DNA from: Octopus bimaculoides
Taxonomy: Eukaryota
Assembly (NCBI RefSeq): GCF_001194135.2
Contig: NC_068991.1
Location: 42,924,708-42,988,707 of the forward strand
Direction: 5' to 3'
DNA: 64,000 nucleotides
In this document: one piece after another, positions 59,487 to 62,706 of the stretch
How positions within the stretch are numbered: the first letter of the stretch is position 1
Layout: every line of letters begins with the position of its first letter
Notes under the pieces: generated by a model
Told to the model about the DNA's origin: nothing
The model's database searches: none
What the model saw: the letters and a program-made list of their open reading frames with translations, nothing else
Program-made: the position numbers and the translations under genes

Positions 59487-60788
59487 CATATATGCATATA
59501 TTTATTCATTTTTGAGGCTTGCACCCATTACTACCCTGAGTTTTCTGCAAAATAGAAACAAAGCAACTCCATATCAGCAGTGGGATGTATGAGTTTGAAT
59601 AAATGAGTAAAACTGTATATGTTTTTGTTATCACTACTGAATATGTGTGTGTATGTATACTTTATATACATGGCTGGGTGTGTATGCCTTAAACATCCCA
59701 TTCGATGGCTGAATATGCCACAGAATGAGATGATGTAATGCTGATTAGGATTAATGCCTATTCTCTGTTTGGTAGAATTGAAGTAAGTACTATTAGTTGC
59801 TGTAATCTTACATCAAAGCATAATATCAGTGTTTAAATACTTTCAATGACCTTTTACCAAAAATAGCTTTTAACCTTTGTCTTCACAGAAGACTGAAATG
59901 TATCTTGCTATGTATCCATGAAGCACTGTTTTGATATGTATGATTATAAAGGTGTTCATAGCTTATGTTTCTCATGACCACTTTTGACTTCTTCCCTCCT
60001 GTTTTAGAATGCTGCCTCTCCCATCAGTTTTCTGGTTTCATTTCAGCCACTCTTAAATCAGTTAGTTACACTGTGTATCTAGTGTTTGTCAAATCTCTGC
60101 TCTGTACATACTGTTGAGCTCTTTTCTTGCATTTCTTCAAATTTTCACATCTATGATTTTTTTTCCTAATACTCAGATACCTTAATTAAGTGGAATAAAA
60201 TATCCCATGTCTGCTTTTAATATCAAGATTTTTTTTTTTACATACACAAGGTTATACATTACATTAACATACTTGTATGCATACACTTGCACATTTGTGT
60301 AGTCATGATTACATACTGAAACATTTAATACATGCATAAGTGCATGCACATATGCATAGGCTTCACTTATTCTTACTATCTTTCTAGTGACAAAAACAAA
60401 ATTGTATCCTCTTATTTCACTAATTATTGAACCATAAGTTCTGGAATCGTTGGTGTGGTTTAAGCTTTTATTGATCAGGGAATACATCAATCTTATATAC
60501 AGAATATTAAGAAAATCTATAAGCAGGGTACATCATCTATGACTTCACGCCAAAATTGAAAAGATCTATATTGACAGGAGAATAAGATGAAGGGATATAA
60601 TATCACCCAAACACTTTAATGCTGCACTGGAAAGCATCTTTAAAAAGTTTAACTAAGATGAAAAAGAAATAAATGTAAATGGTGCATTTTTAAGTTATTT
60701 ATGCTATACTGACAACATGGTCCTCTTCTCAAAATAATGCACGTAAACTGGATCAAATGTTAAATGAACCGAACAGTGAAAGTAATAT

Positions 60789-61520
60789 GTACTTGTACTT
60801 GCATTCACCTAAAGTGGGTTGAACCAACTCCAACCAATGACTCACAAATGCTCACCACATCAGGCAGTCAGCTGTAGTTGTCATTCACTGTTGAGGTGTG
60901 GAGCTCATGTTTAGAGTTTCAGTGAGAATACTAGTTCACATGTGATCCCCAGTCACATGCATTCACACTTTGGGATAGTGTGATCTGTAGCACCTCATCT
61001 TGCTGTCGATTGTCACCCATCACAGAGGATTCAATGATCAAGTCACTGTCAGTTATCGGAGCAGGCATGGCCTGGGTTTGAAGCAGGTTCTAGAGACGTG
61101 CTTTTACAAAATGTAAGGGGTATCTCACTCCCAGTGGCCTTCCAGCACACCAGACACCAACTTGAAATTTCTAAGGGCTTGTGCTAATGCTAGATAGTCA
61201 TTGAGCCTACACAAGGTTCATCTGTCCTTTTGACAGGTTTTATTTTTAGTCCTGCTGGGTTTCTAGCAACCTCCTCACCAGGCAAGCAAGCCTAGTAGGG
61301 GTGCCGGTTTAATCACCAATGACCCGAATATGCTACAGGTTGTACTGAATTCCATGTTACCTGTAGCACTCATGAGATACTTCGATCCTGCTAGTAGTCA
61401 TATGCTTATCTCAAAGCTTAAGCCATACAAGTGTAAGTTCATGCCATAAATGAATGTTGAAACCATGAATGGCTCATGAACCAGACCTAATCCTTGGGAT
61501 CGTATTCCTCACTGTGAAGA
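60789..61520 (-). mobile_element. 732-bp chimeric retroposed insertion with 11-bp TSD
   Basis: GAAAGTAATAT directly repeated at 60778-60788 and 61521-61531; removing the insert restores the host LINE reading. The minus strand ends in a short (CAAGTA)n-like tail next to the left TSD. Confidence 0.8.
61384..61515 (+). pseudogene. 18S rRNA 5'-end fragment (about nt 10-140), not a functional gene
   Basis: GATCCTGCTAGTAGTCATATGCTTATCTCAAAGCTTAAGCCATACAAGTGTAAGTTCA has 7 differences in 58 nt from the universal GATCCTGCCAGTAGTCATATGCTTGTCTCAAAGATTAAGCCATGCATGTCTAAGTACA. Downstream GAAACCATGAATGGCTCAT corresponds to GAAACCGCGAATGGCTCAT with CpG decay. The right boundary is approximate. Confidence 0.9.
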
Positions 61521-62706
61521 GAAAGTAATATAGCAGGACTAAAACTAAAAGTGAAGAAAATACAAAACCTGTTCAACAACCATGCAAAATGTGAAGTCAT
61601 GAAAGTTAATTATGAGGCCAAAGCTGACTAAATTCGTTTGGACAGCTGATAAAAGTGAAATACAACCCCTTTGAAGATAGTAAAAACTTGAATTCAAATT
61701 CTATTGTCTTTTTGGTAAATTAATGTTATAAAAATTAAGAGGTCTCATGTATGACAGCAGCGACTTCTGGAGCAGTGACATAGGCATTTAGGAAAAATAT
61801 GGAATAGAAGCATAAAACAACATAATGCAGTATGGAAAAATGCTTGTTAGAAATTACAAAACAGAAAAATTTGTCAGTAGATTACAGATTAAATTAAAAA
61901 TACATCATTAACCATATTAAGAGGAGGAAGTGGAGACAAGCAGAGCATGGGCCCATACAAATGACAAGAAATGGATAGTTCTGTGTATAGAATAAAAACT
62001 GAGAGAGACAGTCAAATATTTTGAGAAGATAGAAAGACAATGTTGAAATTACATTATGGGTGTTACATGAATGAGAGATTCAAGAGAGTTACAGTTGGTA
62101 CTAGCTTGGGATGGTCTTCACTTTGAACTGGGGTGAGAATTGCAATTCTATATATGGTAATTATATGGCAATTCTATTTTATACAGTGATGTAATTTAAA
62201 ACCATTTTAAACATCTCATTTTACCAAGCTACTGGAAGTAAATATCAGATCATCTTAGATTGCTGGCTAAGATAGACCAGTATTGTATCTAGTAATGAAA
62301 TTTATCCCATCTTTAATAGTGACAATGGTCTTTAAAAGTGCTATTGGACTTGAAAGATATTTGTATACTGTTCCAAAATTAAAGACATAAAATTAGTGAC
62401 CCCATGATGGTAGTGTTTGTTAGAGGGTAAATTAAAACTTTTTCAGCTGTGTAGGAAAAAAATGCAAAAATCTCTCTGGTTTGTGATTTGTGTGCCTCAG
62501 GTTTACTATAATGTACCAGCTTATTGTTACTTGATCTTTCAATAATTAACTGTTCAGATTTCAATTTCTGTCATTCAACTAAGCTTTTCATTCTTTTTTT
62601 TCTTTTATTGTTAAATCTATGCCAATAATTTACAGCCATTGACTATATTGGCTATAATCCTTCATTTTTAAAGTTATACTTGTACCTAGTCAGATGAAAT
62701 CATGTG

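What the first reader, a model, noticed from the sequence alone, without database searches (positions are those of the whole stretch)
60778..61531. Head-to-head chimera of a retroposon and the 5' end of 18S rRNA, inserted as one event with an 11-bp TSD
Seen: (i) GAAAGTAATAT duplicated at 60778-60788 and 61521-61531, splitting an older LINE exactly. (ii) The left 595 bp or so reads on the minus strand as a non-coding retroposon ending in a CAAGTACAAGTAC tail at the left TSD. (iii) The right 130 bp or so is plus-strand 18S rRNA that begins within about 10 nt of the mature 5' end, with no recognisable ETS, and runs to the right TSD. (iv) CpG decay shows the insertion is old. Established: twin priming during target-primed reverse transcription yields inverted 5' segments, and LINE machinery can copy cellular RNAs. 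Inference: the two nicked target strands primed on two different RNAs (retroposon RNA and mature 18S rRNA), and the cDNAs were joined near CCTGCTAG. Alternative and more novel: an amplified SINE-like family with an antisense-18S head that could base-pair with 40S subunits to capture nascent RT.
Basis: partly seen in the sequence, partly recalled or inferred. Interest (0 to 1): 0.8.

Follow-up and report, generated by a model that had tools for sequence, protein, structure and literature searches.

The report
Old mosaic retro-insertion carrying 18S start
A decayed 732-bp insertion inside an old LINE joins a tailed non-coding retro-copy head-to-head with the first ~140 bases of 18S ribosomal RNA; this kind of reverse-transcription accident is already known for other small RNAs, and here a 24-base copy of the cut target strand shows it was built on the spot.

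Summary
GAAAGTAATAT occurs only at 60778-88 and 61521-31 (expected 0.07). With one copy removed, the flanks read as one decayed LINE reverse transcriptase (RVT_1, E 1.8e-6, match spans the insertion point). Bases 61377-~61517 are plus-strand 18S rRNA starting at model position 1 (Rfam SSU_rRNA_eukarya, 59.1 bits, E 1.5e-15). The copy is old: 81% identity at near-invariant columns, CpG depleted.

New finding: the left 595 bp is not uniform. Bases 61233-61256 are an inverted copy of the right flank. It ends exactly at the first base after the right TSD (13 exact anchored bases; 4 of 20000 simulations). The simplest reading is that the plus strand was made left-to-right from the left nick and briefly copied the nicked target strand to its 5' end. 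It argues against a contiguous 595-bp ETS+18S fragment and against a pre-formed SINE family.

A structured 120-nt segment (61257-61376) next to the 18S start remains unidentified; it could be 5' ETS. No other copies could be retrieved, because the host genome is not in the searchable collections.

Antisense 5S, tRNA and U5 chimeras with LINE-1 are already catalogued, so this is a new member of a known kind. Interest is modest.

The parts
60506..60777 (+). Left half of the older, decayed LINE reverse-transcriptase region (host of the insertion); start coordinate approximate
   Evidence: The frame-corrected joined-flank translation matches Pfam RVT_1 (E 1.8e-6, residues 37-145). The insertion point lies after residue 131. 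Six-frame reading shows ...NGAFLSYLCYTDNMVLFSK....
60778..60788 (.). Left copy of the target-site duplication GAAAGTAATAT
   Evidence: There are only two exact copies in the window, against 0.07 expected. It is extendable to 14 nt with one mismatch (D3).
60789..60801 (-). Tail-like repeat, (CAAGTA)2C on the minus strand, directly abutting the left TSD
   Evidence: Read directly from the sequence. It is the only such 12-mer in the window. A match with up to 1 mismatch anywhere in the window is not rare (expected 0.54), so the weight lies in its position at the TSD.
60789..61232 (-). Segment A: 444-nt non-coding sequence, inferred cDNA of an RNA whose 3' end is the tail (candidate retroposon or LINE 3' part)
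   Evidence: No protein or Pfam signal in any frame. No Rfam family. GC is 45.5% against 32% in the flanks; 3 CpG against 23 expected; TG+CA 90 against 55 expected. The direction of synthesis is inferred from the adjoining patch.
61233..61256 (+). Patch m': inverted copy of the right flank (R1-19 at 18/19, plus the R33-41 9-mer, with a 17-nt skip), ending exactly opposite the first base after the right TSD
   Evidence: the repeat finder I1 and I2; blastn. It is the best and only local alignment between insert and flank. It has 13 exact bases anchored at the nick, reached by 4 of 20000 Markov-simulated inserts. There is no further similarity on either side.
61257..61376 (.). Segment B: 120-nt highly structured segment of unknown origin between the patch and the 18S start
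   Evidence: Minus strand folds at -46 kcal/mol, z -3.75; plus strand at -39.1 kcal/mol, z -2.45. No Rfam match at E<=10. Not 5S. No significant similarity to segment A.
61331..61376 (.). Perfect 10-bp inverted repeat (61331-40 / 61359-68, 18-nt loop) followed by the palindrome CTCATGAG (61369-76), right at the 18S junction
   Evidence: the repeat finder I6; blastn self-hit; fold z -2.69. Reading these as snap-back filler made during end joining is inference.
61377..61520 (+). Pseudogene copy of the 5' end of 18S rRNA (nt 1 to about 140), 3'-truncated at the right TSD
   Evidence: Rfam SSU_rRNA_eukarya, 59.1 bits, E 1.5e-15, model positions 1-148, starting at 61377. Identity is 81% at conserved model columns.
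61521..61531 (.). Right copy of the target-site duplication
61532..61572 (+). Source of patch m': the first 41 bases of the right flank (5' end of the nicked top strand); it encodes AGLKLKVKKIQNL of the old LINE RT
   Evidence: the reading frame comes
61532..61700 (+). Right half of the older LINE RT region; end coordinate approximate

Best explanation
This is one old, single-locus retro-insertion made by a LINE's target-primed reverse transcription machinery, assembled in place from several templates.

Proposed steps:
1. The target, inside an older LINE, was nicked on the top strand between ...GTAATAT and AGCAGG..., and on the bottom strand 11-14 nt upstream.
2. The top-strand 3' end primed cDNA synthesis on a non-coding RNA ending in (CAAGUA)n. 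This gave segment A.
3. The growing strand then switched onto the displaced 5' end of the nicked top strand itself. It copied about 24-41 nt and ran off at the nick, giving patch m'.
4. It continued on a further structured 120-nt template, giving segment B.
5. Independently, the bottom-strand 3' overhang (the complement of the TSD) primed on 18S rRNA at about nt 140 and copied it to nt 1.
6. The two cDNA ends were joined head-to-head. Small palindromic filler sits at the joint.
7. Fill-in produced the TSD.
8. The product has no function and has since decayed by CpG loss.

What is shown: the TSD, the split LINE, the 18S identity and its start at nt 1, the flank-derived patch anchored at the nick, and the age.

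What is inferred: the order of the steps; that the templates of A and B were RNAs; that A is a retroposon; and that the 18S template was mature rRNA.
For: The TSD is exact and unique. The flanks form one RVT_1-like reading frame across the empty site.

18S model positions 1-148 start at 61377 on the plus strand, with the truncated end at the right TSD. This matches the geometry described for antisense 5S, tRNA and U5 chimeras with LINE-1, where the RNA's start lies at the junction, its 3' end is truncated, and TSDs are present; those are attributed to twin priming (PMC13174262).

The inverted flank copy ends exactly at the nick, p about 2e-4. This is explained naturally only if the plus strand was synthesised left-to-right and ran off the 5' end of the nicked strand. 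The tail-like hexamer repeat sits exactly at the priming TSD.

The 18S piece has no TSD of its own, so a single event is the simpler account. LINE reverse transcriptases are known to jump templates, including onto rRNA (Zorro3 onto 35S rRNA, PMC3510499; double template jumps in Magnaporthe, PMC2104539, listed). The decay argues against a misassembly of functional rDNA reads.
Against: No second copy of A or B could be found, so 'retroposon' is unproven. The tail is only 13 nt. B is unidentified and could be 5' ETS. No endonuclease motif can be checked because the driving LINE is unknown. Mature 18S is mostly cytoplasmic and bound in ribosomes. In humans, nucleolar RNAs are under-represented among retro-copies (PMC5322556). 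A mosaic with short inverted patches is also what DNA-repair filler looks like.
Confidence: 0.6

Rival explanations
1. Same two-ended event, but the right-hand cDNA was made on pre-rRNA rather than mature 18S. Segment B (61257-61376) would be the last 120 nt of the host 5' ETS, contiguous with 18S. The two cDNAs would then meet at 61256/61257, exactly where the left cDNA ran off the nicked strand.
For: B directly precedes 18S nt 1 on the same strand. B is strongly structured, as ETS regions are. The left boundary of B coincides with the run-off point. Pre-rRNA is nuclear, where TPRT takes place (general knowledge).
Against: The first 9 nt of the 18S copy are far more disturbed than the next 55 nt: a 2-nt deletion plus mismatches against about 87% identity. 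An 8-nt palindrome and one arm of a perfect 10-bp inverted repeat sit exactly at the boundary, which looks like a joint. Neither point is decisive.
Confidence: 0.2
2. This is double-strand-break repair filler or nested independent insertions, not one TPRT event. Fragments of cDNA or DNA (a non-coding piece, an rDNA or 18S piece) and short snap-back copies of the flank were captured at a break by end joining.
For: The insert is a mosaic of at least four pieces. It contains a short inverted templated patch from the flank, a hairpin and a palindrome at a joint. These are typical of polymerase-theta-type joining (general knowledge).
Against: A clean 11-14-bp TSD points to staggered nicks. The 18S copy starts exactly at RNA nt 1, which fits an RNA template copied to its end. 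A tail-like repeat sits at one TSD. The 18S piece has no separate TSD.
Confidence: 0.1
3. The whole 732 bp is one contiguous rDNA or pre-rRNA fragment (595 bp of 5' ETS plus 18S nt 1-140), copied in plus orientation.
For: It is the most economical a priori reading of 'something followed by 18S nt 1'. Segment A was originally CpG-rich. The host ETS is unknown, so a direct comparison was impossible.
Against: A 24-nt copy of this locus's own flank, anchored at the nick, lies 120 nt upstream of the 18S start. An ETS would not contain it. A hexamer repeat lies exactly at the far end, at the TSD. The 18S start is disturbed.
Confidence: 0.04
4. It is one copy of an amplified SINE-like family with an antisense 18S head.
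For: Nothing positive. It is not excluded only because the host genome could not be searched.
Against: There is a single copy in 64 kb. No tRNA-like or other pol III head was found. The insert contains sequence templated by this target site, so it was assembled here. Six-frame searches of 5.8 billion predicted proteins found no related ORF fragments.
Confidence: 0.03

Closest known systems
Antisense 5S rRNA/LINE-1, tRNA/LINE-1 and U5/LINE-1 chimeric insertions attributed to twin priming (PMC13174262, Cell Genomics 2026; twin priming itself from Ostertag & Kazazian 2001, cited from my own knowledge)
   Same: One TSD pair surrounds two segments in opposite orientation. The cellular RNA's 5' start lies at the internal junction. 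Its 3' end is truncated and faces the TSD.
   Different: The partner RNA here is 18S rRNA, which that catalogue does not mention; its 28S cases are mostly in sense orientation. The host is an invertebrate-type genome. The tail is a short hexamer repeat, not poly(A). The other partner is not identified as a LINE. There are two extra segments: a target-strand copy and an unknown 120 nt.
Tailless retropseudogenes (PMC5322556)
   Same: A 5'-complete, 3'-truncated copy of a non-polyadenylated RNA made by internal priming. The TSD shares GTAAT with the 18S sequence expected next, as recalled from memory.
   Different: The 18S piece does not have its own TSD pair; it shares the TSD with an opposed segment. 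In human, only two 18S-derived cases were found, and both were 5'-truncated.
LINE RT template switching to cellular RNAs, including rRNA (Zorro3 onto 35S rRNA, PMC3510499; tripartite chimeric pseudogenes in Magnaporthe, PMC2104539; R2 end-to-end template jumping, Bibillo & Eickbush 2004, as cited in PMC3510499)
   Same: Serial use of several templates within one insertion, with a jump after reaching a template's 5' end.
   Different: In those cases the parts are in the same orientation. Here one jump used the 5' end of the nicked target strand itself, on the downstream side. I did not find that footprint described in the papers read, but the literature check was limited.
rRNA-derived SINEs (SINE28 from 28S, PMC4994717; SINE3 from 5S, from my own knowledge)
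   Same: rRNA-derived sequence at one end of a non-autonomous retro-element.
   Different: Those are multi-copy families with the rRNA part in sense orientation serving as the head. Here there is a single copy, the rRNA part is antisense to the tailed part, and the element was assembled at this site.

Membership tests
Twin-primed chimeric LINE-mediated insertion | One target-site duplication flanks the whole composite | tested here: met
   An 11-nt exact TSD, with only 2 copies in the window against 0.07 expected. The empty site restores an RT reading frame.
Twin-primed chimeric LINE-mediated insertion | Two segments in opposite orientation, each with the 3' end of its template facing a TSD and the 5' ends meeting inside | tested here: met
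   The 18S copy is on the plus strand. Model position 1 is at 61377 (internal) and the truncated end is at the right TSD. Left-to-right synthesis of the left part is shown by the run-off patch. The tail repeat sits at the left TSD.
Twin-primed chimeric LINE-mediated insertion | The tailed segment is a LINE or LINE-dependent retroposon | tested here: inconclusive
   No RT or other protein signal. No other copy in the window or in the searchable collections. Only a 13-nt tail-like repeat supports it.
Twin-primed chimeric LINE-mediated insertion | Endonuclease cleavage motif of the driving LINE at the nick | not testable with these tools
   The driving LINE and its target preference are unknown. 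The nick is at ...GTAATAT^AGCAGG...
Amplified SINE-like family with an rRNA-derived head | Many copies with the same internal junction and different TSDs | not testable with these tools
   The host genome is not in any searchable collection. The best RTE hits reach only 72-75% identity and L001 is another organism. There is a single copy in the window. The metagenome scan of the junction gave one chance hit.
Amplified SINE-like family with an rRNA-derived head | Structure pre-exists in a master copy, independent of the insertion site | tested here: not met
   The insert contains a 24-nt copy of this site's own flank, anchored at the nick.
Contiguous rDNA / pre-rRNA fragment (5' ETS + 18S) | The sequence left of 18S nt 1 is the host 5' ETS, uninterrupted | tested here: inconclusive
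   The host ETS is unavailable. Contiguity over the whole 595 bp is contradicted by the flank-derived patch at 61233-56. The 120 nt next to 18S remain open.
Rfam SSU_rRNA_eukarya (RF01960) | Score at or above the family's gathering score | tested here: met
   59.1 bits against a gathering score of 50, E 1.5e-15. Only model positions 1-148 of 1831 are covered, and conserved columns are 19% diverged. It is a fragmentary pseudogene, not a gene.
Tailless retropseudogene | A 5'-complete, 3'-truncated RNA copy flanked by its own TSDs | tested here: not met
   It is 5'-complete and 3'-truncated, but there is no TSD around the 18S piece alone.

The most novel reading that the evidence does not exclude
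A more probable reading (about 0.5) with moderate novelty is that the locus is a natural record of serial template jumping in vivo by an invertebrate LINE reverse transcriptase. That record would include copying of the displaced 5' end of its own nicked target strand, and possibly capture of a small structured nucleolar RNA (segment B) next to 18S.
Probability: 0.03. Interest if true: 0.75.

Novelty: new member of a known kind. Interest (0 to 1): 0.33.

Why it matters
The locus adds 18S rRNA, and a non-mammalian LINE with a non-poly(A) tail, to the list of RNAs found in opposite-orientation chimeras with retro-elements. So far that list is catalogued for LINE-1 in mammals.

The small flank-derived patch is the more useful part. 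It is a sequence footprint showing that, during first-strand synthesis, the 5' end of the nicked target strand was available as a template. It also shows that the polymerase could jump on and off it. That bears on how the two ends of a TPRT intermediate are held and resolved.

It has no bearing on host function. The insert is a decayed pseudogene inside a dead LINE.

Tried and rejected
Rfam on the whole window and on 2.5 kb gave nothing, even for the 18S piece. Only a 311-nt query recovered it.

Other copies of the insert or its flanks within the window: none, by blastn with word sizes 9 and 7 and by nhmmer.

Six-frame translations of the left part and of the junction region against 5.8 billion proteins, meant to catch spurious ORFs from other copies or from host rDNA: nothing, even at E<=10.

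Identifying the host through its RTE reverse transcriptase failed. The best hits were 72-75% identical contaminant contigs. The 2.7-Mb ENA contig fetched (L001) is a different organism, with 67% nucleotide identity and CpG o/e 0.56. Two exact-protein look-ups found nothing.

I considered reading the left part as a 5'-truncated LINE RT ('AGLKIK...PLE..SSW' on the minus strand) and rejected it. There is no Pfam or tblastn support. The AGLK codons are explained by the copied flank, and the second matching block is in a different reading frame.

A second, rearranged 18S 5' copy just left of the junction is not significant. Segment B is not 5S rRNA. Segment B is not a partial duplicate of A (p about 0.09). 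The 3'-terminal 92 nt of A folds no better than shuffles (z -0.16).

Literature k-mer search returned only unrelated primer hits. The metagenome scan of the junction 22-mer gave one chance match in a non-18S context. The genome-contig scan of A's 3' region returned nothing.
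Full report
**What was claimed, and whether it is there.**

The 11-mer GAAAGTAATAT occurs exactly twice in the window, at 60778-60788 and 61521-61531. The chance expectation is 0.07, and no shuffle gave two copies. 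One mismatch further out, the duplication may be 14 nt long (D3).

Removing the 732 bp and one copy of the 11-mer joins the flanks into one decayed plus-strand LINE reverse-transcriptase reading...NGAFLSYLCYTDNMVLFSK / NNARKLDQMLNEPNSESNI|AGLKLKVKKIQNLF.... With one hand-made frameshift it matches Pfam RVT_1 at E 1.8e-6 over residues 37-145. That score, 28.2 bits, is just under the gathering score of 29.6. The insertion point falls after residue 131, inside the match. So the target-site duplication and the exactly split older LINE are real.

**The 18S piece.**

Whole-window and 2.5-kb Rfam scans reported nothing. A 311-nt query gave SSU_rRNA_eukarya at 61377-61535 on the plus strand: 59.1 bits (gathering score 50), E 1.5e-15, model positions 1-148, cut at the 3' side.

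The alignment starts at model position 1 (AUACU--UCGAUCCUGC against uACCUGGUUGAUCCUGC). So the copy begins at the mature 5' end, with a 2-nt deletion. The confident part of the alignment runs to about 61503. The rest, up to the TSD, is a variable region.

A pairwise alignment to 18S 5' ends typed from my memory agrees. It also shows the invertebrate-type AGTAGTCATATGC.

At near-invariant model columns the copy is 81% identical. The three named segments (A, B, 18S) hold 7 CpG against about 36 expected, with TG+CA in excess. The piece is therefore an old pseudogene fragment, not misassembled functional rDNA.

**The left 595 bp is not one thing.**

It begins at the left TSD with GTACTTGTACTTG, which is (CAAGTA)2C on the minus strand. 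It is non-coding in all frames. It has no Rfam match.

The repeat finder and blastn showed that 61238-61256 (TTTTATTTTTAGTCCTGCT) is the reverse complement of 61532-61550 (AGCAGGACTAAAACTAAAA), the first 19 bases of the right flank, at 18/19 identity. The 9-mer just before it (61233-61241) is the reverse complement of flank bases 33-41.

This is the only significant local alignment between the insert and the flanks. There is no further similarity on either side (z <= 1.6). The two blocks lie in different reading frames of the flanking LINE. So it is nucleotide-level copying, not homology between two reverse transcriptases.

The decisive detail is that the match ends exactly at the first base after the right TSD. 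That position is where the top strand must have been nicked to produce this TSD. Thirteen exact bases are anchored at a nick-adjacent end, and only 4 of 20000 Markov-simulated inserts reached this, counting both ends and both orientations.

**What the patch means (inference).**

A strand complementary to the top-strand flank that stops at that strand's 5' end is what a polymerase makes when it uses the nicked top strand as template and runs off its end. That strand is the plus strand of the insert, made left-to-right. It is therefore continuous with segment A and with the left TSD acting as primer.

It also argues against two alternatives:
A 5' ETS would not contain this locus's flank.
- A pre-formed SINE-like family. 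The composite was built at this site.

**Segment B.**

Between the run-off point (61256) and 18S nt 1 (61377) lie 120 nt that fold far better than shuffles. The minus strand folds at -46 kcal/mol (z -3.75) and the plus strand at -39.1 kcal/mol (z -2.45).

The segment contains a perfect 10-bp inverted repeat (61331-40 / 61359-68). The 8-nt palindrome CTCATGAG lies directly at the 18S junction.

It matches no Rfam family, is not 5S, and is not related to A. Three origins remain open:
- the 5' part of the same RNA as A;
- a separate small structured RNA picked up by an end-to-end jump;
- the last 120 nt of the host 5' ETS, in which case the 18S template was pre-rRNA.

The disturbed first 9 nt of the 18S copy and the palindromic sequence at the boundary lean towards a joint there, but they do not settle it.

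**Mechanism.**

The 18S sequence is in sense on the plus strand, with its 5' end inside the insert and its truncated 3' end at the right TSD. With rRNA as template, it must have been made on the bottom strand, primed by the 3' overhang that is the complement of the TSD. So two cDNAs grew towards each other from the two staggered nicks and were joined head-to-head. Two further template switches occurred on the left-hand strand.

**Comparison with what is known.**

A 2026 catalogue of LINE-1 chimeras describes 5S rRNA, tRNA and U5 segments that are antisense to the LINE-1. Their own 5' start lies at the junction, their 3' ends are truncated, and TSDs of 7-17 bp are present. The authors attribute them to twin priming. 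28S segments are mostly in sense orientation, and 18S is not mentioned (PMC13174262).

Tailless retropseudogenes are 5'-complete, 3'-truncated copies made by internal priming. In human, only two 18S-derived cases were found, and both were 5'-truncated (PMC5322556).

LINE reverse transcriptases have been seen to switch onto rRNA experimentally (Zorro3, PMC3510499). Multi-template chimeras are also described (PMC2104539, listed).

The present locus is therefore a new member of a known kind. Three features are new relative to the papers read: 18S as the partner RNA, a LINE system with a hexamer-repeat tail in an AT-rich, CpG-poor invertebrate-type genome, and the target-strand run-off patch.

**Limits.**

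The decisive test, copy number of A, B and the junction in the host genome plus comparison with the host ETS, could not be run.
- No other copy exists in the window.
- Protein-space searches for spurious ORFs from other copies or from host rDNA were empty.
- The host genome is not in the searchable collections. The best RTE relatives were 72-75% identical, and the one large contig fetched belongs to another organism.
- The metagenome scan of the junction gave one chance hit.
- The genome scan and the literature k-mer search gave nothing relevant.

**Verdict.**

Probabilities:
- in-situ mosaic with twin priming on 18S rRNA: about 0.6;
- same event on pre-rRNA, with B as ETS: about 0.2;
- repair filler or nested events: about 0.1;
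- contiguous 595-bp ETS + 18S: about 0.04;
- amplified family: about 0.03.

Interest is modest, at 0.33. It is a clean natural footprint of a known class of accident, and it carries one mechanistically informative extra feature.

Noticed in passing
window 61377-61535 (method note): The 18S fragment scores 59.1 bits, above Rfam's gathering score of 50. It was nonetheless missed when the whole window (gathering mode) or 2.5 kb (E<=10) was searched, and appeared only with a 311-nt query. Other short rRNA or ncRNA fragments in the window may be missed in the same way.
   Followed up: partly
window 8846-9138 and 45140-45395: Tandem arrays of a 65-66-bp unit (GGCTCC.GTGCCGGTGGCA.GTAAAAAGCACCATTCAAGCGTGG...), about 4 copies each. 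Both lie just downstream of RTE-like reverse-transcriptase ORFs, so they are probably part of that LINE family's 3' region.
   Followed up: no
window 7367-8415, 9515-9937, 20381-21040 (-), 43524-45014: Several decayed copies of one RTE-type LINE (RVT_1, E 2.2e-13 for 43524-44138). Database relatives often carry a PHD finger (PF00628). The closest database proteins are eukaryotic contaminants labelled as Escherichia coli and Herbaspirillum (72-75% identity).
   Followed up: partly
window 31885-32400 (-): An ORF with an integrase zinc-binding domain (Integrase_H2C2, E 3.8e-15), i.e. an LTR-retrotransposon fragment.
   Followed up: partly
window 58989-59363 (+): A 124-aa ORF ending ...KDELKARIMAAFTNLNKETIQKSCRRFQSRLEAVVEANGDFIE. 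From memory it looks like the C-terminus of a mariner/Tc1 transposase. Pfam gave no hit.
   Followed up: partly
whole window: GC is 34.5% and CpG observed/expected is 0.26. There are 1876 N in assembly gaps and very many (TA)n, (CA)n and (TATG)n microsatellites. No cellular gene was recognised. The 18S motif AGTAGTCATATGC and GATCGTA point to a non-vertebrate animal, possibly a mollusc. The organism was not identified.
   Followed up: partly
window 61331-61376: A perfect 10-bp inverted repeat with an 18-nt loop, then the palindrome CTCATGAG, sit immediately before 18S nt 1. This may be snap-back filler from end joining, or part of a structured RNA.
   Followed up: partly
window 60274-60361 (-): A weak mir-297-like hairpin hit (23.7 bits against a gathering score of 90, E 0.44) in TG/CA-rich sequence. 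It is most likely a low-complexity palindrome rather than a microRNA.
   Followed up: no
L002 1678-1699 (LDZU01006177.1): An exact 22-mer match to the B/18S junction pattern in a metagenome contig. The context is not 18S, and the contig has no other similarity to the window (GC 46%, CpG o/e 0.80). It is a chance match.
   Followed up: yes
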